A DNA stretch of 53,524 nucleotides from Guillardia theta CCMP2712 (lineage: Eukaryota; Protista; Cryptophyta). Shown here piece after piece: positions 3,297 to 27,733 of this stretch. The notes below the pieces were generated by a model. That model saw only the letters and a program-made list of their open reading frames with translations, ran no database searches and had not been told where the DNA came from. The stretch's first letter is position 1. Every line of letters starts with the position of its first letter. The stretch is from the NCBI RefSeq assembly GCF_000315625.1, contig NW_005434642.1, positions 647,744 to 701,267 of the forward strand. Direction: 5' to 3'. The position numbers were made by a program, and so were the translations under genes.

Positions 3297-6200
3297 ATGA
3301 GCAGCAACAGCGTGGTGCAACGACCCAACTATAGCCATGCAACTCACATAGCGGCACGTGATGAATGTGCAGACAAGTATCTTGGAAATGCTGTGAGCAC
3401 CAACATTGTGCGTTCGAATCATTGTCTTCCGGATGATGTTGGTAAAGAACACCTGCATGATGGGGACAGGGATAGAGACTCTCATGGTCACTCGTCGGAC
3501 CTCAGTGACGACGAGGTTGCAAACATTCGTGATGAGAACGATGATGATCAGAACACTGTTCGCGTCGACAAAATTATGGCGTTGGTATCGAGAGAGAAAG
3601 AATACAACGTGTTAGTAGGATGGCCAGACAGAAACGAAGAGGCTTTCTTGCGTGGAAAGCCCGAGCTCAAATCTTTGATCCTTGATGCTACTTCATTTGA
3701 TGAAGATGATCTTTTACATCTCACTTTGGAAATTTTCTTGGAAGTCGGTGTTCACGAGAAGCTTGGTATTCCCACGGATAAGATGAAAAGATTCATTTTG
3801 GGAGTGCGGGATAGAATGCTTGATAATCCATACCATAACTGGACTCATGTTTTTGATGTGATGCAAACAGTGTACAGCCTTGCAACAATGTGCCGTGCTT
3901 TTGATAAGTTGTCAGACATTCAAACCTTTGCCTTGATTGTGTCGGCTCTTTGCCACGATTTAGAGCACCCAGGTGTTAACAATCTCTTCCTGATCAAGTC
4001 AAGATCTTCTTTGGCAACACTGTACAACGAAACCTCTATCTTAGAGAAGCACCATGCATTTCGTGCTTTTGAGCTGATGTTTCATGCAAATACAGATCTG
4101 TTGTCCAGCTTTACCCCGGAACAATATGCAGACTTTCGTGAAATAATGATGAGCATCATTCTTGCAACCGACATGGCTCGACATGGAGATTACATGGCTC
4201 GTTTGAAGCAAATTTTGGCTGAAAACGAGGGTAAAGAAGGTCAAATCGAAGTGGATGAACTCTTTCTTATGGAGATCATCATCAAGTGCGCAGACACTGC
4301 TAATGTGCTCAAGCCATTCGAAGTTGCAAAGAAGTGGGCTCTGAGAGTAACAGATGAATTTTTCCTGCAAGGGGATATGGAAAGAGCTAGTGGAATGGAA
4401 GTCACGCCTATTTGCGATAGAACTTCTCAAAGCAGGGTGGCTGTACAGAAAGGCTTCATCGATTTTGTGATCACACCATTTTACACCTTGGTTGGCAACT
4501 TGCTGCCGGACTTGCTGGAGTGTTTCAAACAAATTCAAATTAACCGTCAAGCCTGGGATGCATATGATGACGCCATGTTGGTTGAAGAGGTGGGGAAACA
4601 CAAGTCGGGATTGCTCCCGAGCAATGGTGAGCCGGTTTCTCTCAGGATAGTAACATGGAACATAGCTGCAGTGAACAATAACCCGTTTGAATACTGGATC
4701 ACACATGGTCAAACCAGGCAGAGCGCAGACTATGCAAGTTTGATGCAAGAGGTACAGCTATTAATCGACAATCCGGAAGGACGGGACTTTGAAATTAAGG
4801 ATATAATTTCCGACGAAATGGTGGCAGAAGTCAAGGCGGAGATGGAATCATTTGGATTGGAGGGTCTGGACGAGTGGGAGAACAGGTGGAAGACAGAATA
4901 TAAGCATCGTTTAGCAATCAGCGGCTTTTTGAAGGACAAAGCAATTGGAAGCAAGCGCTTGATATCTATGCCTGACAGAGTTACGAATACCATCAACAGC
5001 GAGGGCTCAGTCTTGATGCGACCTTCGGTGATATCCATGTTTGATGGAGATTGTATGGGCTCGTTAGATGAATGGTGGGTGACATGGAAGGACTACATGT
5101 TTCATCGTCAAGTCAAGATCATCGACAGAAACAAACCTGGAGTTTCCAATGAGTTGTTTGTCATCGAGATGCTTCAAAAAATCGCTCACTCTAAATACCC
5201 CGCGATCACTGAGGAAGAAGAAGCCATTTCTATTCCACTACAAGTATGTTTTGTGCGTTTTCTTATTCATTGCTGATTTTTCGTAATCAGGTGATTGTGC
5301 TTGCCGTCTTTGATGCAATTTTAATTCATATTCTGAATTCGCTTGCTCCCACGACCTGGCAGCCAATCAAACGCTCTCTTTGCCAGGCCTTCAATCAAAA
5401 CAAAAGTCTACAGGTTGTTATGCTCTTGTTTTGTCCGGCTGCATTGCAAATCATTGCCACATTTTCGGTGTTGACATAGCTGGTAGGTGTTATCCATACT
5501 GAAGAATACCTACTCGGACGTGGATGTATTCTTCATTCAAGAAGCAGCGGCCGGATTTGTAGATGCTGCAAAACAGGTTATGGGAAGGAAGTACATGGTG
5601 ATGAGGCCCTATCTTCTTGATGGTAATGCAACTCAATTCTCAAGCCTGAATTGAAATTGACTTCTGCACAAAGGATTTCGAAATCAGAACAGCATCATTC
5701 TAGCCTCTCGCGAATTCTTCGTCGAAGGAAGTACGGAACATGTTATTCGCCTTGCCGGGGGAGGGAAATGGATCGCTCCAGGCGATCTCTGTGCAATGAC
5801 CATGAAGGCAAGTGCAAGGGACTGTTCTGAACTGTGTGAGGTAAAATTGCCTTGTTAGGGAGTAGACGGGTTTCGATATCTTCTTGCCTCCTTCCATGGC
5901 GACACCAACGGCTTGGCTTCGCTGCCTGTGTTGAAGGTCAAGATGGCTTGCACGCATGAGCCAAGTCTCACTTTAGCGCAGGCCTTGCACGAAGCAATCA
6001 CAACATCATATCCAGGTCTCGTTGAACGCTATGATGATACTGTAGTGCAGCGGAGCTCATGATATCTGCACAGATCATGTCTTCATATGTGGCATCGACG
6101 CCAACACACACAAGGTAAACCAGAGCCCTTGCTAACAATGCGCATGAGTGACCGTGGCGGCAGCAACACGGGTCCAACTGTCAGGGAGTGAATCACTTCC

Positions 6201-6724
6201 ATGACGCCTTCGCCGAGATGGGGATGGACTCCTGCTGGGGTGAGCTGCTGAAGAGGTGTGGAGGAGACAGAAGCTGACAGCAGACTTGATGCAGGAGAAA
6301 CCCCCAGTGTCAAGACTTGGACGACGAGGAACGCAAGGACTTACCTCCAGCCTCAGCTGCAGAAGGCTGTTGGCATCGCGGATGCAGCTCGAAAGGTGAG
6401 ATGGAAGGGATAGACGGGTGTTGAGATGACTCCCATGTACAGGGCGATGTAAACTTGAAAGACTGGTTGATCTTCTATGAAAATCAGGCAAGGGTTCTTT
6501 CTTTTCTTGACAACTTGGCTTGCCATTGGAGTGACTCTTCCTTCAGTTTGTTTGCGCTGAGCAAGCTCGCGACAACACGGGTGCTCGCAACTTTGATGAG
6601 GTCTGAGGTTGGTGTGGCTGTAGCTGGTGGCTCACTCCTTACCCAGGAAATGGTTTTCCCGACGCTTCAATTTCCCTCCGATCATGCGATCGTATCTGCT
6701 TTACTCACTCGCAAGCCTTCATGA
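3297..6724 (+). CDS. Class I 3',5'-cyclic nucleotide phosphodiesterase fused to a C-terminal EEP (exo/endonuclease/phosphatase) domain
   Basis: PDE motifs YHNWTHVFDV, HDLEHPGVNN, LATDMARH, CADTAN, EFFLQGDME, QKGFIDF. EEP motifs TWNI, FFIQE, SFHGDTNG, GIDANT, DWLIFY, FPSDH. Hand-spliced exons: 3297-5243, 5291-5413, 5487-5622, 5674-5807, 5859-5936, 5982-6015, 6074-6114, 6164-6239, 6295-6395, 6443-6487, 6547-6580, 6624-6724. An acceptor at 3294 suggests an upstream exon or UTR intron. Confidence 0.9.
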
Positions 6725-13428: not shown

Positions 13429-13501
13429 CATCATCACCATCACCATCATCATCATCATCATCATCATCATAATCATAATCATCATCATCATCACCATCAC
13501 C

Positions 13502-13532
<31 letters not shown>

Positions 13533-16500
13533 CCACCACCACCATCATCATCATCATCACCACCACCACCACCACCACCACCACCATACGTTGCCTCCTC
13601 TTCCTGCTTGTCCTCCTCCACCACCACCATATCCTCCCCCTCCTCCTCTCTGTCCGCCTTCTGCTTCCCTTCAGTTTCCTCTCATCGTCACTTGTCTCTG
13701 CCTTCTCCTCTCGTCTCTCCTCGTGCTGAGGTCATCTGAAGACCAGGGAAGCAATCTGGCAGGGAAATTTTTCCAGGTAACGCAGGGAAAACATGAGCAT
13801 GAGGGAAAGAAGGAGAGGAGACGAGAGGAGAGAAAAACATGAGGAGCAGCGGCAGGAAGCAGGAGCAGGCAGGAAGTCTTAGGAGCATGCAGGCGAGTCT
13901 CCTGCCCTACCTGGCGTTTCTCTACTTCCTCAACAACAACGGGGCGAAAACACCCAAACTATCAGGATTCGGCTTCGGGGTAGATCTCTCCTCCTCCTTC
14001 TCTCTTTCCTTCTCCCTCCCCCTCCTCCTCCCCCTCCCCCTCCCCCTCCCCCTCTATCTCCCCCTCCCCCTCCTCCTCCCCCTCCCCATCTCTCTCCCCC
14101 TCTCCCTCCTCTTTCTATTCCTCTTCCCCTTCCTCTTTCTCTTCCTCTTCCTCTTTCTCTTTCTCTTTCTCTTTCTCTTTCTCTTTCTCTATACTCTCTC
14201 TCCTTCTGCTCTCCTCCTCCTCCTTTCTCTCTCTCTCTCTCTCTTGCTTCTTAAATTTTGCTTCAGTTTCTCCTCCTCTTCGTCATCGCCACCATACCTA
14301 CAGGCATCATCTCTAAGACGGTGAGAAAGCAGCAGCAGCAGCAGCAGTCTTTGATGTGCCTGCAGGTCTACGGAGTCTCACTAGCAGATGTTGACTGGCT
14401 GCATGGAAGTGCCGAAGCACTTTTAACGGTAAACGAGGGGGGGGGGAGGAGAGAAGGGAGGAGAGAGAGAGAGAGAGAGAGAGGAGGAGGAGGAGGGAGA
14501 TACAGAGAGGGAGAATAAGGAGGGGATCAGGAGGAGGAGATGAACAGGAAGGAGCACAAGAAATGATCAAGGCTTAGGTCACAAATATTCTCATCGCGGT
14601 TGGCTTTCGGGATGCGATGAGCTCAGGGACAGCTGAGGGTGAGAGAGGAACGTTGAAAATCGTTGGTAAGAAAGCAGAGCATCGTTCCTCCTCTCCTCTC
14701 CTCTCCTCTCCTCTCCTCTCCTCTCCTCTCCTCTCCTCTCCTCTCCTCTCCTCTCCTCTCCTCTCCTATCCTATCCTATCCTATTCTCTCCTCTCCTCTC
14801 CTCTTCTCGCCCTTGTTCCATTACTCCTGCCTCATCTTGCTGCGTTTCTTCTTGCATTTGCTCTTCCTCTCCCTCTCTGACTCTTCTCAGCCATCGCGAT
14901 TGCTGCTCTTGTTGCTGGTGCTGCAGCTATTGGAAGTCCAGTGCTCGGTTTCGAAGCTCATACGCCATTCTTGGTACCTTTCGTTCCTCCCCTCCCCTCC
15001 CCCTCCCCCTCTCCTTCCTCTTCTCTCCTCTCCCTCCCTCCCTCTTTCATCGTTTTTGGCATCACCACCACCTCTCTACGCATCATCACCACCACCACCA
15101 CCACCACCACCTCCTCCTCCTCCTCCACCACCTCCACCTCCTCCTCCTCCTCCTCCACTGTTTCGTTTCTTCCTCCTCCTGACTCCCTCAGGCCGGCCTT
15201 GGCGATCTTCCTTCAAACTTCTTCGCAAGCATGGGAGCTGCCTCTGGTCATCATCCTCCCTTGAACCTTTCCAACCCTCCTGCTATCACCACTCCTCCTC
15301 CTCCTCCTCCTTCCTCTCCCTCCTCCTTCCTCCCCTCCATCCTCCTTCCTTCGTCGCTCTCGCTTTTCACCGCTCCTTCTCCCCTGCCTTCTCCTCCATG
15401 ACCTCCTTAGTTCTCATCTCACCCTCACTGCTTCCTCTTATCGTGCCTCATGCTTCTCACTTGATCGGGTAGAGCCTGCAAATGCTCTTAGCATCCCAAC
15501 TTGGGCGATTCACTTCTCTTCCGTCTTTGAGGTGCCTTCGCCTTCCCTTCCCTCCCTCCCTCCTCCCTCCTCCCTCCTCCCTCCTCCCTCCTCCCTCCTC
15601 CCTCCTCCCTCCTCCCGCCTTTTCTCACCTACTCTCTCAGTGGATCTTTGCGATGCGTCTCGTCTGGGACTATGCCGACGCTTCGAAGGTGAAAATCTCT
15701 TCCACCTGTCCATCCCCATCCTACCTTCTCATCCACCTCCCCACGCTTCGACTTCGCCTCTCCCCTAACATCTTCACCCCCTTCTCCCTCCTCCTTGTTT
15801 CCTTCTGTACCCCAACTCATCTGCTTTCTCTGCTTCGTCTCCCTTCCCTTTGAGTCCCTTGTACTTGAACTGCTTCCCCCCATCTTCTTCGCCTTCTTCC
15901 TCCTCCTTCCTCTCGCCTTCTTCCTCATCCTGCTTCTTGGCATCCAAACTCATCCTTCATGCAGGACCAGACGTGGAAGGGCCTTACATGGGGCATGCTT
16001 CCCTTGCATGCGAGGTATGGCGACACTTGAGCACTGACAACTTCTTTCCTCCTCCTCCTCCATTCCTCCTCTCCACTCCTTCTTTTCACTCGATTCCCGG
16101 CTCTCGTTGTCTACGCGCACTCATCGTTTCTTCCCTTTCAGCGGCGTTGCTGCCTGTACCTATCACTTCTTTTACAACAACCCTGGTATACCTTCCTCAC
16201 AGTCCCCTCCTCTGCCCTATCCGATCTTCTCCTCCTCTTTACCTGCTCCTAACCTCGACATTTGCTTTGGTTCCTCCTATTCCATCTTCTCACTCCTTCC
16301 TCCCTTCTCTCTTGCTCTTTGCCCTCCTCCCTCCGTTTCATTTTCGTTCTCACAAGTGACGGAGCAGATCTTTCCTTTCTTGTTGCCTTGCAAGCTGGAC
16401 TGACAGTGAGAAGATGCAGAATGTTTCACCTCTGACTGACTTTGCTCCTGCCTCCCCCCCCATCCCCCGTCCTCCTCCTCCTCCTCTCTCCTCCTCCTCC

Positions 16501-17446
16501 TCCTCTCTCCTCCTCCTCCTCCTCTCTCCTCCTCCGATTTCAGTGCCTTGGAAACTTTACTGTTGCCATTGCTGCAGCAAGAATCGCACTCGCCAACGGC
16601 TGGAAGGTATGGGCATGCGTGAACGAGGCGAGATTGAGGGGAGTGGGGAGGAGGAACAGGAGGATGGGGAGACGATGGAGTGGGTGGGGCTGACGGATGT
16701 CTCAGGTGCCTTTCTTCTCCTCCACAGGTTTTCTGCGATCTCTCCTCTCACCCTCTTCCCCTCCCCTATCCGCTCTCTTCCTCTCTTGACCTCGCTGCCC
16801 TCGGTTACCATACCCTACCCACCTCATCTTCTCTTCTCTCGTCTCACTCCAATCTTCCTCGCCTTCTCCGTTGACCCTCACAGTCTGAATCTTCTCTTAC
16901 CTGCTCCTATCGATGACGATGTGGCAGAGGCTGCATCACAGCAAGGAGATGAGAAGAAGCAGTTTCTCGAAGTGAGCTTTCCTTCCCCTGCTCCAACCTG
17001 CTCTCTATCATCCTTCCCGTTCGCCTGTCCTCGCACCTCATCCTTCTTCTCTTCGCCTCTACACAACTTTCTCTTGTTCTCCTTGCTGACAGTCGTTCAG
17101 TCAAAGCCTCCCCAGGAGAGCGACACCATGCTCATCGCCAAGCTTGCCGGCTTGACTGTCACCTCTGCGTATCTGGTGATTGACCTGCTACCTCCTCGTG
17201 CGCTCCTGCTGTCTGTCCTCCCACTACTTGTCTCTATGCTCACATCTTACCATCTTCACGCAGGTCAAGTACGGCGAGCTTTTCCTCTCCCTTCCCTTCC
17301 AGGCCAACGCAGTCGCCGCCATCGCCATGGCAAGTTTCTTGCCCAAGGCGTGAGTGGCCTTACGATTCTCGCAGGTCGCTACTCCCCCGGCTCTTCTCGC
17401 CTCTTTCTACTTGCAGAAGGCGGCGGCAGCACAGGAAGCAGCGTAG
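12860..17446 (+). CDS. DUF3593 + DUF2499 (Ycf49-like) multi-pass membrane protein, probably plastid-targeted
   Basis: Spliced fragments NLAGKFFQ/ASLLPYLAFLYFL, FVIATIPTGII, YGVSLADVDWLHGSAEALLT/VTNILIAVGFR (DUF3593). ANALSIPTWAIHFSSVFE/WIFAMRLVW, WKGLTWGMLPLHA, GVAACTYHFFYN, LVALQAGLT/LGNFT (DUF2499). C-terminal VKYGELFL...AAAAQEAA*. Signal-like LFLLLLAVSCHAFAF at ~12885-12926; start codon unresolved. Confidence 0.8.
13378..13586. repeat. Compound (CAT)n/(CAC)n intronic microsatellite
   Basis: About 200 bp of CAT/CAC triplets; source of spurious poly-His/Asp/Met ORFs. Confidence 0.95.
14686..14802. repeat. (CTCCT)n pentanucleotide intronic repeat (second copy at ~13012-13077)
   Basis: Directly visible. 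Confidence 0.95.
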
Positions 17447-17605
17447 AAGAGAAGAGCAGCAAGCAAATTGCAAGCTCCTAACACAAGGATAGGAAAGAGT
17501 CAGTAATTTACCCTTTTGTTTACTTCTCCCTGCCTACCAACACTCTTCAACATCACAACACCCCACGCTACACCGGTCAACTTGGATGGTCCAAGCACAA
17601 TGCCA

Positions 17606-19259
17606 TCACTGCTGCGAGCATGCTTTCTTCTTCTTGTCGCGCACGTCCTTGCTCTGCCACAGAACATCAGTCACGCATGACCAGCACAAGACATCCTTAC
17701 ATCCGAGGCATTGGTTGAAGCTCCCTTGCGCTCCGGTTGCGATGTGCGCGTCGGGGACGCGTGGCGGGTGCCTGAGCTGCTTGACGAGCTCTCCTTGCTC
17801 GGCGTGGGTGAGGAGCTTGCAGCAGTCGCTCCATCGGCCTCAAAAGGTGCTGCAGCGCGTCTTACTCGCGCCTGTGACACACGATCAGAATCTTGTTGTG
17901 CTGCAGAACCTTGTGCTCACCTGTCCAATCTGAGCTAGACGAGTTTTGAGGATAGGGAATCTCTCCATAACAGCTTCAAAGTCTGATCTCATCAGTCGGA
18001 ACAACTCGACAGCCTCCACAGGCTTGTTTGTGTTCTTAGGTCCACTTCCTGCTCCCAACGATTTGACATCTGCTGTCCTCTGCTTCGACACGGTGAGAGC
18101 AACTTCACCGAAGAAGTCACCTGCACAAGAAGCGTCAGCACATATACTTGGGCATCCAAAGCCACAAATCACCTGTTGTAAGACGATCCACAGTGTTGCC
18201 GTTAACAAGAATTTCCACCGATCCAGAATTAATGAAGTACATGCAATCACCTACTTCACCCGCCTGAATAACAGGCTTTCCATACTCAATCTTAATCAGC
18301 TGCAATTTCTGCGTAACTTCCTGAAGACAAGCAGGATCGATGTTGTCGAAGATAGGCAACTTTCTGATAAGCAAGAATGCACGATGAGAGCTATGCAGCT
18401 TCTTGGCTGAGGCTTCACCAGCATTCTGGATCCACGGATGATCCAAGCACTGCTGTGCGGAGTACCTCTTGGCGGGATCAACAACCAACATCTTGGACAC
18501 CAGATCTTTCGCTTCTTCTGAAACACCATCCCAATAAGGCGATGGAAATGTATACTCCCCCTTGCGAATTTGTTTAAATAATACTGCTGTAGAATCGTCG
18601 TAAAATGGAGGGAAACCGCAAAGCATGATGTAGAGAACCACTCCCAGAGACCAGAGATCAACCTCAGGGCCATAACCATTTGTGAAAGGAAGGTACGGAT
18701 CCAAAACCTCAGGCGCTACATACCCTGGAGTTCCACAAGTGGTCTTCATCTGGGAATTCTCCGACACAAATTTCGATAGACCAAAATCTGCAACTTTGAT
18801 CGTATTGTAATCAGGTGAGCTCGGATCATTGGAAGCATAAAGAAGGTTCTCAGGTTTCAAATCGCGGTGAGTGATTCCAATGCTGTGCAAATAATGTACT
18901 GCATTGAGAACGTCTGCGGTCACAGAAGCGGCATCCTTTTCAGAGAAATGATCAATAGCGATAATGCGGTCCATGACCGTTCCCCCTGTGATAAGATCCA
19001 GAATCAAATAAGTTTTGTTCGCTTCATCATAAACTTCGTGCAGCAGGACGCAGTTGGGGTGTGAAACCTTTTTCATCGTGGCTATTTCCTGCTCCAGTGA
19101 TTCGGCATCAAAAACAGCATCCTTCTTATCAACGATCTTAATGGCAACCCGAGTTCGGCTAGCCTTGTGAATCCCTTCTTTAACAACCGCAAAGGATCCT
19201 TTTCCTATGGTTTTCCCGATTTCATAGGATTTGTGGACTCCTTTTGATAGGATACCCAT
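17606..19259 (-). CDS. CaMK1-like Ser/Thr kinase with C-terminal cyclic-nucleotide-binding domain and polybasic CaaX tail
   Basis: GKGSFAVV, VAIK, HRDLKPEN, DFG, CGTPGYVAPE, GFPPF. CNB motifs GEVGDCMYFINSGSVE and FFGEVAL...RTADV. Exons 19259-18173, 18120-17921, 17871-17701, 17653-17606, ending DKKKKACSQQ*. Confidence 0.9.
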
Positions 19260-21660
19260 CTTAGGCAACGGTGTTCAGATACTTGAGACACCTCAAACAC
19301 CCGACGATGGTAATCCTCTCTGGAGCAAAGACAAACACGTTCCTAAGCCCAATCGACCTCTCCTGGCTTCAATGGGATACTTCCTGCTACGCCAGGCAAA
19401 TACGTCAGTGAAGGCAAGAAAATTCATTTATCCACAATACTAGAATGAAGTGTCGAAAGGCAATCTAATCTCCCTTAAATCAAATCTCGCTTGAAATAGC
19501 ACATCAAATCATTACTGCTGCTTAGCTGAAAAATATGCTTCGCATATCAGCAAGCTTGCAACCAAAAGAAACACAGAACACAAAGCAGGCCCAAAGATAC
19601 AAAAACGTCATTGCCCGTCAAAGCATTTCAGCAAGTCACATGCGTGTTCGCTGAAATGATCAGATTCAAAAAGCAACCAATCGATGACTACTGTCCCATA
19701 GCAAGTAACCCCATCACATTGCATCACGTAAGCTACTTGCAATGCAGCTTCTGCGTGAGTTCCAAGATCAAATGAAGAACACGATAATGGAAAAAGATCT
19801 TTTCAATGAGAAGGTGCGTTGAAGCAGTCAAGCATTGAACGAGTTCATGACAAGTTGCGATGACAAGAAGGTACAGAGGACAAGCCGGCTTAAGTGTTGG
19901 AGCACAGATGTCATGAGGGAGAAGGCAAACAAACCAGGAAAGGAAGGGAGAGGAGAGCAAATGAGCGCTGAGAAACGAAATGAGAGTCAAAACACATCAA
20001 GCCAAACAAACGCGGATGAGGAACTGCATTGAGAGCATCCCTTCGCCACGCCATTGCCGCGACGCGGAAGGTTGGCGTGTGACTCGGCCAAGCACCAATG
20101 GAGCTTGATCGGTACGTGGGGTGGGTCCTTTTCAGGTATTTACCGGGGTAGAATTCGTAATTTTTGGTGATCAGGTTCTCTTGAGCAGGTGGGTACTGGG
20201 GATACACCGGTGTACATCTCCATTGGAGGGTCCTGCAAAGCAAAATACACCTAATGAGGTGGGGTACTGTTGCAGGGTGACTTCAACACCTCGATCAGAT
20301 TGTATTGTTTTGAGGGGTAGGTTGTTGAGAATTCATAAGGTAGGGTACCTATCCCAAGGGACGTTGGCGTACAAAATCGCCATGGAGCGTGTCTAAACTT
20401 AGATGGCTGAAGCACACGAATATCTGAGTAACTGAGTCTAAATGTGGTTTACATATTTCAAATATAAAGAAAACATTTGAGTATTTGATGGTATATTGGG
20501 AGTAATATCCAAATGAATACGCCAAATCTTGAATCGATGTAGAATGGGTGCGACTTCAGATCAGATTTGTGGGTGGGTGGTTTCATATCTTGGGGTGGGT
20601 GTTTTGAACGCCGACATGGGGTGGTCATACCCGATCGCCCCACCCCACAGGCAGACCGGGGAGTTCAAGATCTTTGTGGGGGTGAGTGATACTTTACAAA
20701 CCCTGTGGATAGGGTATTTTGCTTTGAGGGTACTTAACCCTAGGGGTAGGGCTCCTTCTTGTCTCGAACACGTGGGGTCCTTAAGCCCCATAGGGGTCAA
20801 AGAGACCGTAGCGGATGTAGCGAGCAAGGGGTACCAAAAGGTAAAGTAATGTGATGCGCAGGGTAAAGTAGGGTAGGGTAGGGTGATGGAGGGTGGGGTA
20901 GGGTAGGGTAAGATATTTCACCAGCAAGATGATTGTGAGAAGATAAACGGGGTTGATTTGGGGGTGGTGAGGTAAGGGGGTAGGGTATTAATCGTCTTCC
21001 AATTAAAGAAAAGATGGGTAAAGGGAGGGTAGCCAAGCCTGTCCAGGGGTTTTAATTACAGTGATACCCTTATGGATAAAATTGGGGTAGGGTACTGGAG
21101 GGTTTTGGGGGGAGCAGGTGGGTGAGATGTGAAAGGGGGGGTCATCGGCGAGAGATGGTGGGGGTTGTCCCATTCATGCAATTAATAATAAGACGGATTA
21201 TAAATCTACAATCATATTGTAAATGTATTAGCCATACCTCATTTCTATTCGTTGTAAATTGGTTTAACTGCTGGCCGCGCTGTGCGTACTGCGGTGATCT
21301 GAGGCGGGTCTATCGTAATGTAGTCGTCGATGAGTAATAATTTTGGCCATGAGTGTGTTTCGAGAGGAGCAGGGGCAGGAGCAGGAGCAGGTGAAGCAAG
21401 ACCAGGATCAGGAGCAGGAGGAGCAGCAGGAGCAGCAGGAGCAGCAGGAGCAGCAGGAGAAAATCATGTGCAAAAGGGGGATGGTGATGTGACATGGAAG
21501 TCGACCGTCCTTGCTCTTCTTGACGAATGACGTAAGGTTTTGACATTTAGAAGTTAAGGGATACAGACGTTAAGAAGGACCAGGCTGCGTGTAAGCTTCC
21601 TTGGTGTAGACGGCGGAGGAAGGGGAGGAAGTTGAAGAGCCTTGGAAAGAGAGGGTCGGT

Positions 21661-24909: not shown

Positions 24910-27733
24910 TTAGCTTTGCTTGCTTTGCGAGTCCGAGCTGGTGTCTGAGTGAGGCAAGGGAGGGTCGACAGTGAGCAGCTGAGAGAGGCTCGAGCTTTGA
25001 GGCCCCCGTATCCCCTGCCTGCCGCTCCTGCTGTAGTCGAAGTGAGTCTTGGGGGGCACGAAGACAAGGTCGTCGATCAGAGCTGGGTCCTGCACGCGAG
25101 GATCATTACAGGACAGCGACATGCTTCTGTGCCGCAGCATCGCGGAAGAGTCTCTGCTCCTGCTGCTCGTCTTGACAGGTGCAGACGTCGGTTTCGAGGC
25201 TGACTCAGGCGTCTTGCTCTCAGCAAAGGATTTCGATCGACTGCGATGGACGAACGTGCTGGAAGGCACTCGATTGATCACTTGCTGTTGCGCTCTTGAG
25301 TCGACGAGTCTCGAAGAGTCCTCAAAAGTTCCGCTCGCCTTGTCCTGGTCTTGTTCTGCCGGTGGCTCCAAGACTGCTGCATGCAGAAGCTTGGCCGCTG
25401 GGATCGGGCCGAGAGAGGGCGGGAGAGGCTCCGGAGCAGACGGCACTTGGGGGTTGTGGGAGAGGCTGCGAGTCACCTTGACGTCTTTGGTTGCCTGTTG
25501 GCTGTTGAGGAGAATTTTCCTGCCGATTGCTGCATCAGCTTGCGATGGGGCTGGTTGACTGGAAACTCCTAGTTGAGTGCCTGGGGGAGGGTCAAAGGGG
25601 AGCACATGGTCTGGTTTGAGACTGACTCACCTAGGACCTTCTCAAGGGACTGAGTGAAGGACTTGAAATCTTGTCTCAGCGCCTTCACGTCAGCTTCGAT
25701 CGATCTCAGGCGAAAGTCGTTCTCGTCCTCAACTATCTGACTGACGTGAATGAACTCTTCCTTGCTGATTTGATGATCCTTGTCAGAGTCCAGCCGCGCA
25801 ATCACGAGTGGATGGAGAGAAGGAGGAATGCCCAGCAGCTCCAGAGCTTCCTTGGCTTCATTCAGGTCCAACACGCCATTCTCGTCCTGGTCGACCTGAT
25901 GAAAGATATCGAGGACTCTGCCCGTGCCTCTGTTTGAGTAGCCCCACGAGTTGATTATATCTGACTGCTGTGCCGCCTGCATCGCAAGCAACTTCATCAT
26001 CAGAAACAGCGCAGAGAACTCCTTGCTCGACGTCTCTGCCATCGCATTCGACATCTTCCTCAAAGCGTATCGACGAAGCTCTTCTTTCATGATCTCTTGG
26101 AACTGATCACGGCTGAACTCGCCGTTGCTGTTGCAATGCCTTCCTCCTTCTGTCAGAAACTCGAAGTCGTCCTGCAGGATGTGGATCGGCGAAGAGGTCG
26201 GAAGCTGCTTGAGGCCTCGCTGGAACTCCTCGAAGTTGAGGCCACCAGACCCGTCCTTGTCCAACCGCTCGTAGGTCTCCGAGATGCGCTGCGTTAGATC
26301 CCTTTCGTTGACGAACAAGGCAAGATGAGCTGAGAGAGGATCGAGCACGCTCTTGGAGCGACGTAGCTCCTTCTCCTTCTCCTCTTGCTCTCGCTTCTCA
26401 GTCTCTATCTGAAGCTTCTCGGCTTGAATCGAGGTGATGAATTCATCCAGCAGCACCGCCACAACCACGTTGATGAGGAAAACTCCAGCGATGAGCACGT
26501 AGCTCACGAAGAAGAAAGAGGTCCAGTAGTCGAATTGAGTCTTCATCTCCGGTCCGTCGAAGATCGACCGTGTTACTGCAGAGGCCCAGCTGCATGATCA
26601 TCGTCAGTGCTGAAAGGCGCGGTCTCAGTCAAAGTTGATCGTTACCTGTCTCCTGTGACAACTTGAAACATCTGCGATACCCCAGCAAGGTCAGAACCGA
26701 TTAGGATAAGTGATTGTGTCACCGTGAAGAGCGATCTCGAGAAGGTTCCGAAGAAAGCTTCACTTCTTGCGGAGAAGAAGTGAGTTCCGAGAGCGGCCCA
26801 AATACAAGTAACAAGAGCGAGGATGATGAAGCTGTTGGCAACAGGAATGACGGCAGAGGCCAGGGCTGTGATGATTCTGTTGAGAGATTTCAACTTGCGG
26901 AAGACTCGAGCGACTCGGAAGACTCGGATAAGTCGAAACACTTTGAGCGAGGGAATCCCCGACGCAAGAACCGTCAGCAGCGACAAGCTGACAATGATTA
27001 CATCCAGGAGATTCCATCCATCAGATAAAAACTCCTTGCACCAGTTCTTGGACTTAGCAAACAAGTTGACAGCGAGTTCGAAGCAGAAAACAGAGGCAAA
27101 GAAGATGTCCATCTGATCAAAGAGGTTTTGAGTTGGACTGCCATCTTCTGGCAGAATCTCTGCTTGCACAAGATCCATAGCAAAGCTCGCCATGATGAGG
27201 CTTGCAATTACAGTCTGAGTTATTGAATTCTCATAAGCGCGCTTAACACGCAGTCTCCACAGTGCCAACGGTCCTTTTTCAGTTCTGTTCGCCTCTTCTT
27301 GCACCCAACGTGCATGTTTCGATTCCCTTTCAATGGCTTCCGACCATTTGCCAGCATCTGTACGGAGTGCTCTATGAATATAGGCTCTGCCGCTATTGAA
27401 TCCGTCAGGAATAGTCTCAATGATGATTTCCTGGTAGTCATCGTTGCTTTCGTCTTCATCCTCTTGCAGAAAGACCTTGTTGATCTCGTGCAAGGGGATG
27501 TGATCGATGATCAAGTCTGTCGAAGGGTTCGCGAAGTACAAGCACTCCTGCGTCAAGACGGCCAGTCGCGGCATCCATGTGATGGTGGAGCCGACGCGTT
27601 TCTTATCGATGAGTCCTTCTCTGATCCGCGAGGACTCAGGTGGCAGCGTGAAACTTTTTGCCATGTCTTCGGGCACTACATTCTCGTGAACGATGTGCCC
27701 TGCATTTCGTATCGCGGAGATGGCTGCTGCCAT
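24910..27733 (-). CDS. Single-domain voltage-gated cation channel (EukCat/BacNav-like) with N-terminal PH domain and C-terminal EF-hands
   Basis: PH-like IREGLIDKK...WMPRLAVLT...IIDHIPL...KWSEAI. S3 DGWNLLDVIIV; S4 LKVFRLIRVFRVARVFRKLK; pore FTMFQVVTGDSWAS; S6 FLINVVVAVLLDEF. EF loops DKDGSGGLNFEE, DQDENGVLDLNE, DSDKDHQISKEE. Exons 27733-26723, 26671-26646, 26589-25631, 25568-24910. Confidence 0.9.

What the first reader, a model, noticed from the sequence alone, without database searches (positions are those of the whole stretch)
17606..19259. CaMK1-type kinase with a C-terminal cNMP sensor: a reversed PKG analogue
Seen: a CAMK-group kinase (CGTPGYVAPEVL, GFPPFYD) is followed, where the CaM-binding autoinhibitory helix usually lies, by a complete CNB domain with cassette FGEVAL...RTA. 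Known: PKA and PKG are AGC kinases with N-terminal or separate CNBs; Thr after the cassette Arg (RTA) is the PKG-type cGMP determinant, versus RAA in PKA. Inference: an independently assembled cyclic-nucleotide-gated kinase, possibly cGMP-preferring.
Basis: partly seen in the sequence, partly recalled or inferred. Interest (0 to 1): 0.78.

Follow-up and report, generated by a model that had tools for sequence, protein, structure and literature searches.

The report
Lipid-anchored CaMK-type kinase with cNMP sensor
A cryptophyte alga (Guillardia theta) expresses a calmodulin-kinase-type enzyme whose calmodulin-binding segment is replaced by a cyclic-nucleotide sensor and which ends in a lipid-anchor signal; it belongs to a conserved, uncharacterised family that appears to be a separate way of building a cAMP/cGMP-controlled kinase.

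Summary
Window 17606-19259 (minus strand) holds a four-exon gene of Guillardia theta CCMP2712. RNA assemblies from two studies splice out all three introns. The product equals a 501-aa transcript-derived database protein.

- **Kinase type.** The kinase is CaMK1-like, not AGC. Its best solved relatives are CaMK1D, CaMK1, CaMKIV, DCLK1 and CaMKII.
- **Sensor.** After a conserved CaMK-type regulatory helix comes one complete CNB domain. The phosphate-binding cassette residues Glu368, Arg377 and Ala379 are invariant in 34 full-length relatives.
The protein ends in a disordered tail with a polybasic stretch and a CaaX box (CSQQ). Some paralogues end in a transmembrane-like tail instead. G. theta has at least 9 kinase->CNB loci. 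The public annotation splits this gene into two models.
- **Range.** Every named member is a cryptophyte.
- **Mechanism (inferred).** Models place the linker helix on the kinase as in autoinhibited CaMKII/DAPK, and the sensor's moving parts touch the kinase. cNMP binding would therefore release autoinhibition.
- **Ligand.** The RTA argument for cGMP preference is weak. The nearest CNB folds are HCN/SthK channel domains, and paralogues carry RIA or RVA.

It is not a PKG despite automatic names. It is a new variant of a known kind. The scan noted paralogues elsewhere in this genome (s1-433756, s1-434800).

The parts
17505..19385 (-). Minimum transcribed region. The 5' end is at least at 19385. 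The poly(A) site is near 17504-17508.
   Evidence: In one search the X5 contig starts at 19385, the X1 contig ends at 17508, and poly-T loose ends lie before 17504.
18173..19259 (-). Exon 1 (coding): residues 1-362 plus the first base of codon 363. It covers the kinase, the linker and the first half of the CNB.
18121..18172 (-). Intron 1, 52 nt, GT..AG, inside the CNB just before the cassette. The same intron position is seen in four paralogous loci.
   Evidence: Skipped in the X1 and X5 contigs.
17921..18120 (-). Exon 2: residues 363-429. It covers the cassette, a variable loop, beta8, alphaB and most of alphaC.
17872..17920 (-). Intron 2, 49 nt, GT..AG.
17701..17871 (-). Exon 3: residues 430-486. 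It holds the end of alphaC and then a Ser-rich disordered tail.
   Evidence: pLDDT is below 50 for residues 440-501.
17654..17700 (-). Intron 3, 47 nt, GT..AG.
   Evidence: 17 raw RNA reads and two contigs skip it.
17606..17653 (-). Exon 4 (coding): residues 487-501 plus the stop codon.
18429..19226 (-). Protein kinase domain, residues 12-277, CaMK1-like. K41, E58, HRD 131-133, DFG 158-160, activation-loop T173 and APE 182-184 are all present.
   Evidence: Pfam scores 248 bits. The PDB best match is CaMK1D at 7e-81. T173 aligns with the activation-loop Thr of CaMK1.
18363..18428 (-). Linker, residues 278-299 (QNAGEASAKKLHSSHRAFLLIR). It is a CaMK alphaR1-like regulatory helix that runs into the N-terminal helix of the CNB.
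   Evidence: KKLHSS aligns with KNIHQS of CaMK1. The model range up to residue 307 superposes on the regulatory segment of autoinhibited CaMKII 2bdw. It is nearly invariant in alignment A1.
17851..18362 (-). Cyclic-nucleotide-binding domain, residues 300-436, interrupted by introns 1 and 2.
   Evidence: Pfam scores 48.2 bits. The domain-alone model has pLDDT 89 and matches HCN2 at Z 20.0, rmsd 2.0, 134 aligned.
18071..18112 (-). Phosphate-binding cassette FGEVALTVSKQRTA, residues 366-379.
   Evidence: F366, G367, E368, L371, R377 and A379 are invariant in 34 sequences.
17609..17635 (-). Polybasic stretch (KKKK, residues 493-496) and the CaaX-type end CSQQ (498-501).
   Evidence: 21 of 63 full-length family members end in Cxxx, and 13 of these have 4 or more K/R just upstream.
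17505..17605 (-). 3' UTR of about 100 nt.

Best explanation
This is an expressed nuclear gene of Guillardia theta. It encodes a 501-aa protein with four parts: a catalytically intact CaMK1-like kinase, a CaMK-type regulatory (alphaR1-like) helix, one HCN-like CNB domain in place of the Ca2+/calmodulin-binding segment, and a disordered tail ending in a polybasic stretch plus CaaX box.

Proposed mechanism. The protein is held at a membrane by a farnesyl anchor plus basic residues. Without ligand, the linker helix lies on the alphaD/alphaF-alphaG surface of the kinase C-lobe as in autoinhibited CaMKs, braced by the CNB. Binding of cAMP and/or cGMP to the cassette (Glu368, Arg377) moves the cassette and the C-helix, pulls the helix off and activates the kinase. 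The conserved activation-loop Thr173 may need phosphorylation as well.

Shown here: the gene structure, its expression, the identity of the domains, the conservation and the family. Inferred: ligand binding, the direction of regulation, prenylation and the identity of the ligand.
For: Splicing and expression are shown.

The kinase is CAMK-type. All 60 best solved relatives are CAMK-group, led by CaMK1D at 7e-81, with no AGC kinase among them. The alignment with CaMK1 runs through the activation-loop Thr and into the start of alphaR1.

The CNB is complete. Pfam scores 48.2 bits. The fold matches HCN2 at Z 20.0 and PKG II CNB-B at Z 18.8 over the whole domain. The cassette Glu, Arg and Ala are invariant in 34 full-length relatives.

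The full-length AF2 model (pLDDT 80.5, pTM 0.77) superposes residues 8-307 on autoinhibited CaMKII 2bdw_B residues 9-300 (Z 37.1, rmsd 1.8, 289 aligned). It superposes likewise on autoinhibited DAPK and on the CASK CaM-kinase domain.

The two-chain test of kinase 1-283 against 284-440 scored ipSAE 0.68, with the best of 3 controls at 0.01. The mark was reached by 51 of 78 solved complexes and 2 of 108 mismatched pairs. The runs agree in at least 88% of contacts and the partner's pLDDT is at least 77. The interface joins kinase residues 96-107, 211-222 and 239-246 to residues 286-299, 306-312, 362-363 and 419-423. A similar complex is solved for CaMKs, so this pass may come from memory.

Membrane tails recur across subfamilies as CaaX or TM-like ends. 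The genome holds at least 81 class III cyclase-domain matches. The family is conserved in at least eight cryptophyte genera and has at least 9 loci in G. theta.
Against: There is no biochemical evidence for cNMP binding or regulation. The docking comes only from structure predictors trained on autoinhibited CaMK structures, and I could not inspect model coordinates. A variable loop of about 15-25 residues sits between beta7 and beta8, and its effect on the pocket is unknown. CSQQ is not a textbook aliphatic CaaX. Some divergent paralogues have lost the cassette Glu or Arg (P0160/P0282, P0172), so not every member can sense cNMP.
Confidence: 0.6

Rival explanations
1. The CNB domain is a structural or otherwise-liganded regulatory module. 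Either cyclic nucleotides do not control the kinase, or they inhibit it rather than activate it.
For: CNB-homology domains that do not bind cNMP exist, for example in KCNH channels (established knowledge). Some divergent family members have degenerate cassettes. The direction of regulation cannot be read from the models.
Against: In this gene and in the bulk of the family the cassette Gly, Glu, Arg and Ala are invariant. That is the signature of ligand-binding CNBs and is lost in non-binding homologues. The whole fold, including the lid helices, is preserved.
Confidence: 0.2
2. The kinase is still controlled by Ca2+/calmodulin, which would bind the basic amphipathic linker (HRAFLLIRKL). The CNB would add a second input, making the kinase a coincidence detector.
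For: The linker sits exactly where CaMKs bind calmodulin. It is hydrophobic and basic, and nearly invariant.
Against: Sequence similarity to CaMK1 stops at about residues 289-294, before the CaM-anchor region. Residues 295-307 are the CNB's own N-terminal helix and are predicted to be packed. Pro302 interrupts a long CaM-target helix. I ran no CaM-binding test.
Confidence: 0.12
3. The fusion is an annotation or assembly artefact: two neighbouring genes (kinase and CNB) or a decaying gene.
For: The public genome annotation has two separate models, GUITHDRAFT_157803 (kinase, 307 aa) and GUITHDRAFT_159653 (CNB, 162 aa).
Against: Single RNA contigs from two studies span all four exons with the introns removed. 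A complete 501-aa transcript ORF is identical piece by piece to the exons. The same order of domains is conserved in many cryptophytes and in at least 9 loci of this genome.
Confidence: 0.01

Closest known systems
CaMKI / CaMKIV / CaMKII (Ca2+/calmodulin-dependent kinases, CAMK group)
   Same: The catalytic domain is the closest match (7e-81 to CaMK1D, about 40-44% identity in structural alignments). The activation-loop Thr is conserved. The start of the regulatory alphaR1 helix is kept, and in models it takes the autoinhibited pose.
   Different: The calmodulin-binding part of the regulatory segment is replaced by a CNB domain. There is no CaMKII association domain. The C-terminus carries a CaaX/polybasic signal.
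PKG and PKA (AGC-group cyclic-nucleotide-dependent kinases)
   Same: A protein kinase is combined with a canonical CNB domain carrying a Glu/Arg cassette. UniProt's automatic naming calls relatives 'cGMP-dependent protein kinase'.
   Different: The kinase is CAMK, not AGC. There is one CNB C-terminal to the kinase, not tandem CNBs N-terminal to it or on a separate subunit. Autoinhibition is predicted to work through a CaMK-type helix, not a pseudosubstrate upstream of the CNBs. The CNB is closer to channel CNBDs (28-29% identity) than to PKG CNBs (19-24%).
CDPKs (kinase - junction - calmodulin-like EF-hand domain)
   Same: The logic is the same: a CAMK catalytic domain, a junction/autoinhibitory helix and a sensor fused in cis C-terminally. 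A kinase+EF-hand protein (P0074) is 59% identical in the kinase domain and groups next to cryptophyte CaMK1-like kinases.
   Different: The sensor is a CNB domain, not EF-hands. Pfam finds no EF-hand.
Dictyostelium GbpC (Roco kinase with C-terminal cGMP-binding domains)
   Same: It is a precedent for a non-AGC kinase whose cNMP sensors lie C-terminal to the kinase in the same polypeptide (PMC6320773, PMC8684759).
   Different: GbpC is a 294-kDa protein with a MEKK-like kinase domain. The signal passes through RasGEF and Roc domains. Here a single CNB directly follows a CaMK regulatory helix.
HCN / SthK / MloK1 channel CNBDs
   Same: These are the best structural and single-domain sequence matches for the CNB (Z 19.5-20, rmsd about 2.0, 28-29% identity). 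The helix preceding the barrel is included in the match.
   Different: Here the domain is attached to a kinase, not to a channel C-linker.

Membership tests
CAMK group, CaMK1-like kinases | An intact eukaryotic protein kinase catalytic core (VAIK Lys, alphaC Glu, HRD, DFG, APE) | tested here: met
   K41, E58, HRD 131-133, DFG 158-160 and APE 182-184 are present. Pkinase scores 248 bits.
CAMK group, CaMK1-like kinases | The catalytic domain is closest to CaMK1/CaMKIV/CaMKII rather than to AGC or other groups | tested here: met
   The best 60 PDB sequence matches are all CAMK-group, led by CaMK1D at 7e-81. The best structural matches are CaMKII, CASK, DAPK and DCLK1 at Z 35-38. I built no tree with AGC outgroups.
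CAMK group, CaMK1-like kinases | An activation-loop Thr equivalent to the CaMKK site of CaMK1 | tested here: met
   T173 in MKTTCGTP aligns with the Thr of LSTACGTP in CaMK1. It is invariant in 34 relatives. That this is Thr177, the CaMKK site, is recalled knowledge.
CAMK group, CaMK1-like kinases | A Ca2+/calmodulin-binding segment after the autoinhibitory helix | tested here: not met
   Similarity to CaMK1 ends at residues 289-294. From about residue 295 the sequence is the CNB domain. It is therefore CaMK-like in its catalytic and alphaR1 parts but cannot be filed as a Ca2+/CaM-dependent kinase.
Cyclic-nucleotide-binding domain (Pfam PF00027) | A profile match above the curated threshold | tested here: met
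   48.2 bits against 27.5 on the transcript protein. Exon by exon the match is 21.6 plus 15.1 bits.
Cyclic-nucleotide-binding domain (Pfam PF00027) | An eight-stranded beta-barrel with a cassette helix and alphaB/alphaC lid | tested here: met
   The domain model has pLDDT 89.1. It matches HCN2 at Z 20.0 (134 aligned, rmsd 2.0) and PKG II CNB-B at Z 18.8 (139 aligned) over model residues 1-151.
Cyclic-nucleotide-binding domain (Pfam PF00027) | Cassette residues that hold the ribose and phosphate (Gly-Glu ... Arg-x-Ala) | tested here: met
   G367, E368, R377 and A379 are invariant in alignment A1. They are present in 83 of 109 family sequences by pattern.
Cyclic-nucleotide-binding domain (Pfam PF00027) | Actual binding of cAMP or cGMP | not testable with these tools
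   This needs binding assays.
PKG (cGMP-dependent protein kinase, AGC) | An AGC-type catalytic domain | tested here: not met
   No AGC kinase is among the best 60 solved relatives. The kinase is followed by a CaMK-type alphaR1 helix.
PKG (cGMP-dependent protein kinase, AGC) | Tandem CNB domains N-terminal to the kinase | tested here: not met
   There is a single CNB at 300-436, C-terminal to the kinase at 12-277. Only 11 residues precede the kinase.
PKG (cGMP-dependent protein kinase, AGC) | cGMP selectivity determinants (Thr after the cassette Arg; beta5 Arg) | tested here: inconclusive
   Thr378 is present. It is replaced by V or I in 23 of 83 relatives. The residue aligned with the beta5 Arg of PfPKG CNB-D is Asp358. 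The role of those PKG residues is recalled from the literature, not tested here.
CaaX-prenylated, polybasic membrane-anchored proteins | Cys at the fourth position from the C-terminus, conserved among relatives | tested here: met
   This protein ends in CSQQ. Relatives end in CVQS, CHQQ, CTQS, CVCS, CIQQ, CSHQ, CVVS, CTIS, CRVS or CVQQ. In all, 21 of 63 full-length members do so.
CaaX-prenylated, polybasic membrane-anchored proteins | A basic cluster just upstream | tested here: met
   6 K/R lie in the 12 residues before Cys498. 13 of the 21 CaaX members have 4 or more.
CaaX-prenylated, polybasic membrane-anchored proteins | Actual prenylation and membrane localisation | not testable with these tools
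   This needs labelling or localisation experiments.
CDPK | C-terminal EF-hand calmodulin-like domain | tested here: not met
   No EF-hand family appears in the Pfam scan.

The most novel reading that the evidence does not exclude
Cryptophytes evolved their own class of cyclic-nucleotide-dependent protein kinases. A channel-type (HCN-like) CNB domain directly gates the CaMK autoinhibitory helix. The enzymes are pinned to membranes by farnesyl or transmembrane tails. The family has expanded to at least 9 genes per genome. It would serve as the main kinase output of the very large cyclase repertoire, for example in flagellar or light-guided behaviour, in place of or beside PKA/PKG.
Probability: 0.35. 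Interest if true: 0.75.

Novelty: new variant of a known kind. Interest (0 to 1): 0.6.

Why it matters
Cyclic-nucleotide-dependent kinases are textbook AGC enzymes (PKA, PKG). A conserved, expressed and expanded family that couples a CNB sensor to a CaMK catalytic core through the CaMK autoinhibitory helix would be an independent solution to the same signalling problem. It would show that the CaMK regulatory helix is a general-purpose switch that accepts calmodulin, EF-hand domains (CDPK) or a CNB domain. It would also give a compact single-chain, membrane-targeted cNMP-gated kinase with CaMK substrate preference, which could serve as a tool. Finally, it identifies a likely effector for the large cyclase complement of cryptophytes, organisms otherwise best known for their channelrhodopsins. 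On the practical side, the reference annotation of G. theta splits this gene into two models and should be corrected.

Tried and rejected
1. **Joined exons.** The exons were searched by reference. The full length was studied through the transcript-derived database protein P0125, into which each exon translation fits exactly. Gly363 comes from the split codon G|GT.
2. **Literature.** Seven searches found no paper describing this architecture. The Phytophthora infestans kinome paper lists 'cNMP binding' under 'AGC, CAMK' in its Table 2 (PMC3019232). All six entries I could reach in its supplement are AGC/PKG or PP2C+cNMP pseudokinases. I could not locate the CAMK entry, so an oomycete counterpart is neither shown nor excluded.
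3. **ESM Atlas feature search.** It returned kinase+CNB clusters labelled Chlorophyta or Ciliophora. It gives no domain order. The Ostreococcus kinome paper places that alga's cNMP kinases in AGC (PMC4143559). I treat these rows as PKG-like, not as the same architecture. This is unverified.
4. **Two-stretch hits in the large search.** I suspected CNB-kinase proteins. They are tandem kinases.
5. **Canonical PKG in G. theta.** The four best multi-CNB ORFs carry no kinase. I made no systematic search for PKG or PKA, so whether cryptophytes also have them is open.
6. **N-myristoylation.** The conserved start MGILSKG does not fit the usual Gly-x-x-x-Ser/Thr spacing, and one paralogue group starts MAIL, so I make no claim.
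7. **Kinase-domain tree (FastTree).** It does not make the CNB-bearing kinases strictly one clade. Most exceptions are truncated gene models. P0019 looks like a chimeric transcript, because its C-terminal half matches P0011.
Full report
**What is there.** The window is nuclear DNA of the cryptophyte Guillardia theta CCMP2712. Two public gene models of that strain lie in the same 90% cluster as the product: GUITHDRAFT_157803 (a 307-aa kinase) and GUITHDRAFT_159653 (a 162-aa CNB protein). The genome tool places the window on contig C32. On the minus strand an ORF starts at ATG 19259 and runs through a kinase domain into the first half of a CNB domain. With three short GT..AG introns (18172-18121, 17920-17872, 17700-17654; 52, 49 and 47 nt) the reading frame continues to a stop at 17608-17606.

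Each exon was searched by reference. Each exon translation is an exact substring (residues 1-362, 364-429, 430-486, 487-501) of P0125, a complete 501-aa ORF from a public transcriptome. P0125 was then used for all full-length work.

**Expression and splicing.** Assembled RNA contigs from two separate studies (X1, X5) cover the gene and skip exactly the three introns. A DNA-like run (X16) is colinear with the genome. In a raw RNA-seq run (X23, 3'-biased) 17 reads cross intron 3, and poly(A) loose ends mark the 3' end near 17504. The published annotation, which splits the gene into two models, is wrong at this locus.

**The kinase.** Pfam Pkinase covers residues 12-277 at 248 bits. The 60 best solved relatives by sequence are all CAMK-group: CaMK1D (7e-81), CaMK1, CaMKIV, CaMK1G, DCLK1, CaMKII, CDPKs, CHK2, the RSK C-terminal kinase, phosphorylase kinase and MAPKAPKs. 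No AGC kinase is among them. All catalytic residues are present. The alignment with human and rat CaMK1 runs through the activation loop, where T173 matches the Thr of LSTACGTP. It continues past the kinase domain into KKLHSS, which matches KNIHQS, the start of the CaMK regulatory helix.

**The sensor.** On the full-length protein, cNMP_binding scores 48.2 bits against a cut-off of 27.5. A model of residues 288-438 alone (pLDDT 89.1, pTM 0.83) matches complete CNB domains over its whole length:

| Solved structure | Z | rmsd | Aligned | Identity |
|---|---|---|---|---|
| HCN2 | 20.0 | 2.0 | 134 | 28% |
| SthK | 19.5 | – | – | – |
| PKA RI-alpha CNB-B | 18.9 | – | – | – |
| PKG II CNB-B | 18.8 | – | – | 19% |
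| MloK1 | 18.8 | – | – | – |
| CNGA1 / TAX-4 | about 18 | – | – | – |

By sequence, the best single-domain match is also an HCN CNBD (56 bits in one stretch). The high rank of Plasmodium PKG comes from summing its four CNBs, of which the best single domain scores 36 bits.

The cassette is FGEVALTVSKQRTA (residues 366-379, window 18071-18112). F366, G367, E368, L371, R377 and A379 are invariant in 34 full-length relatives. A variable loop of about 15-25 residues lies between beta7 and beta8.

**The junction.** Only about 20 residues separate the kinase from the CNB, and they are nearly invariant (L288, H289, H292, F295, L296, L297, I298, L301, F304). The full-length AlphaFold2 model has pLDDT 80.5 and pTM 0.77. 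Its residues 8-307 superpose on autoinhibited CaMKII (2bdw_B residues 9-300; Z 37.1, rmsd 1.8, 289 aligned). They superpose likewise on autoinhibited DAPK1/2, DCLK1 and the CASK CaM-kinase domain. So the helix at 290-299 occupies the place of the CaMK regulatory segment, and the CNB begins where CaMKs bind calmodulin.

A two-chain test of the kinase (1-283) against the regulatory module (284-440) gave ipSAE 0.68, with the best of three controls at 0.01. The mark was reached by 51 of 78 solved complexes and 2 of 108 mismatched pairs. The runs agree in at least 88% of contacts and the partner's pLDDT is at least 77. Residues 286-299 and 306-312 contact kinase residues 96-107 (alphaD), 211-222 and 239-246 (alphaF-alphaG). 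Residues 362-363, just before the cassette, and 419-423 on the C-helix also touch the kinase. Autoinhibited CaMK structures are solved, so this pass may be from memory. It shows likeness, not binding.

Residues 440-501 are predicted to be disordered. They end in KKKKACSQQ, a polybasic stretch followed by a Cys four residues from the end. Among 63 full-length family members, 21 end in Cxxx (CVQS, CHQQ, CTQS, CVCS, CIQQ, CSHQ, CVVS, CTIS, CRVS, CVQQ), spread over divergent subfamilies. 13 of these have at least 4 K/R just upstream. Six other members end in a transmembrane-like hydrophobic segment. Recurrent C-terminal membrane anchoring is therefore a property of the family. Prenylation itself is an inference.

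**The family.**
- The word search found full-length relatives carrying both domains in Rhodomonas, Hemiselmis, Cryptomonas, Hanusia and Guillardia.
- Cluster look-ups added Rhodomonas salina, Teleaulax amphioxeia and Baffinella frigidus.
- The exhaustive search of 1.84 billion representatives listed about 15 representatives that match collinearly across kinase and CNB. Every named one is a cryptophyte. The other top hits are kinase-only proteins or tandem kinases.
- A shape search of the ESM Atlas found one unlabelled cluster (52 members) with the kinase C-lobe plus CNB in the same arrangement.
- In G. theta itself, six-frame HMM scans show kinase followed by CNB at no fewer than 9 loci: C32 (this gene), C44, C24, C13, C11, C40 and three within 10 kb on C28. 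The intron inside the CNB sits at the same position in five of them.
- In a FastTree of kinase domains (160 rows), a 98%-supported branch separates 40 rows from 120 rows. The 40 rows are 32 CNB-bearing plus 8 without a CNB match: six are truncated models and two (P0075, P0090) have long tails without a CNB match. The 120 rows include 116 without a CNB. The nearest kinases without a CNB are cryptophyte CaMK1-like proteins of about 330 aa and one kinase+EF-hand protein. This fits assembly of the fusion within, or at the base of, cryptophytes from a local CaMK-type gene. The tree has no AGC outgroup and only local support values.
- A few divergent members have lost the cassette Glu or Arg (P0160/P0282, P0172).

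**Ligand.** The evidence does not decide the matter.
- The nearest CNB folds are channel domains solved with cAMP as well as cGMP.
- The residue after Arg is T in 60, V in 13 and I in 10 of the 83 relatives with a recognisable cassette.
- The position aligned with the beta5 Arg of Plasmodium PKG CNB-D is the nearly invariant Asp358. That the beta5 Arg contacts guanine in cGMP-selective PKG domains is recalled from the literature.

I therefore leave the preference open. My rough guess is 40% cGMP, 35% cAMP and 25% both. The genome can clearly make cyclic nucleotides: at least 81 class III cyclase-domain matches.

**Comparison with known systems.** It works like a CDPK or CaMK in which the sensor has been swapped for a CNB. 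In outcome it works like PKG or PKA. It is not a PKG: the AGC catalytic domain and the N-terminal tandem CNBs were tested and not met. This holds although UniProt's automatic names call relatives 'cGMP-dependent protein kinase' and JGI calls them 'CaMK I'. It is not a Ca2+/CaM-dependent kinase in the strict sense either, because the CaM-binding segment is replaced. Dictyostelium GbpC is a precedent for a non-AGC kinase with C-terminal cGMP-binding domains, but the signal there passes through RasGEF and Roc domains (PMC6320773, PMC8684759).

I found no paper on this architecture. The Phytophthora kinome table mentions cNMP binding in 'AGC, CAMK' without detail (PMC3019232), and I could not resolve that entry.

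**Earlier notes of this scan.** After forming my reading, I found that the scan had already noted paralogues on other DNA of the same genome. One note describes a three-gene cluster, two with prenylation tails and one a dead copy (s1-433756). The other describes a kinase-CNB-transmembrane gene (s1-434800). My own genome search found the C28 cluster independently. Its third copy scores weakly for both domains (kinase 97 and 20 bits, CNB 26.5 bits), which fits a degenerate copy.

**Verdict.** The architectural interpretation is supported. The cGMP inference is not supported. The mechanism is plausible but untested. This is a new variant of a known kind of system, of moderate to good interest.

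Noticed in passing
window 17606-19259: The public G. theta annotation splits this single transcribed gene into two models: GUITHDRAFT_157803 (kinase, with a spurious N-terminal extension and a wrong 3' end) and GUITHDRAFT_159653 (the CNB from MYFINSG onward).
   Followed up: yes
window 13500-17400: About 3.5 kb just downstream of the gene is pyrimidine-rich on the + strand. GC skew falls to -0.46 and AT skew to -0.40. It is made of many CT/CCT/CTCCT-type microsatellites, and the long ORFs listed there are low-complexity.
   Followed up: partly
window 19386-19500 and beyond: One RNA contig (X1) continues at least 549 nt upstream of 19500, while another (X5) starts at 19385. Either there is a long 5' UTR variant or the assembly merged the gene with a neighbouring transcript.
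   Followed up: no
window 3297-6724 and 24910-27733: Other first-stage notes on this window report a cyclic-nucleotide phosphodiesterase fused to an EEP hydrolase about 11 kb away, and a PH+EF-hand voltage-gated-type channel about 6 kb away. I did not examine either. A cNMP-degrading enzyme near a putative cNMP effector may be coincidence.
   Followed up: no
L004 (G000:C28:644000-653999): Three kinase->CNB genes lie within 10 kb. Two are strong copies on the + strand. A third, on the - strand, scores weakly for both the kinase and the CNB and is probably degenerate.
   Followed up: partly
L010 2416-4878 (+); L009, L011, L012; proteins P0224, P0254: G. theta and related data hold proteins made almost only of CNB repeats. 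Examples are an 821-aa ORF with 6 Pfam CNB stretches, P0224 (1011 aa, 7 Pfam stretches) and P0254 (9 matches to the family CNB HMM). One ORF combines a CNB with MORN repeats. None has a kinase.
   Followed up: partly
G000 genome-wide: There are at least 81 matches to the class III adenylyl/guanylyl cyclase domain, many as two-domain ORFs of 900-1300 aa. This is a very large cyclase repertoire.
   Followed up: no
P0126 (Hanusia phi), P0019, P0160/P0282, P0172: The Hanusia orthologue has a 517-aa form with 16 extra residues at the exon 3/4 junction, which looks like in-frame retention of intron 3 that keeps the CaaX end. P0019 looks like a chimeric transcript. P0160/P0282 have Leu for the cassette Glu and P0172 has His for the cassette Arg, so they are likely non-binding sensors.
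   Followed up: partly
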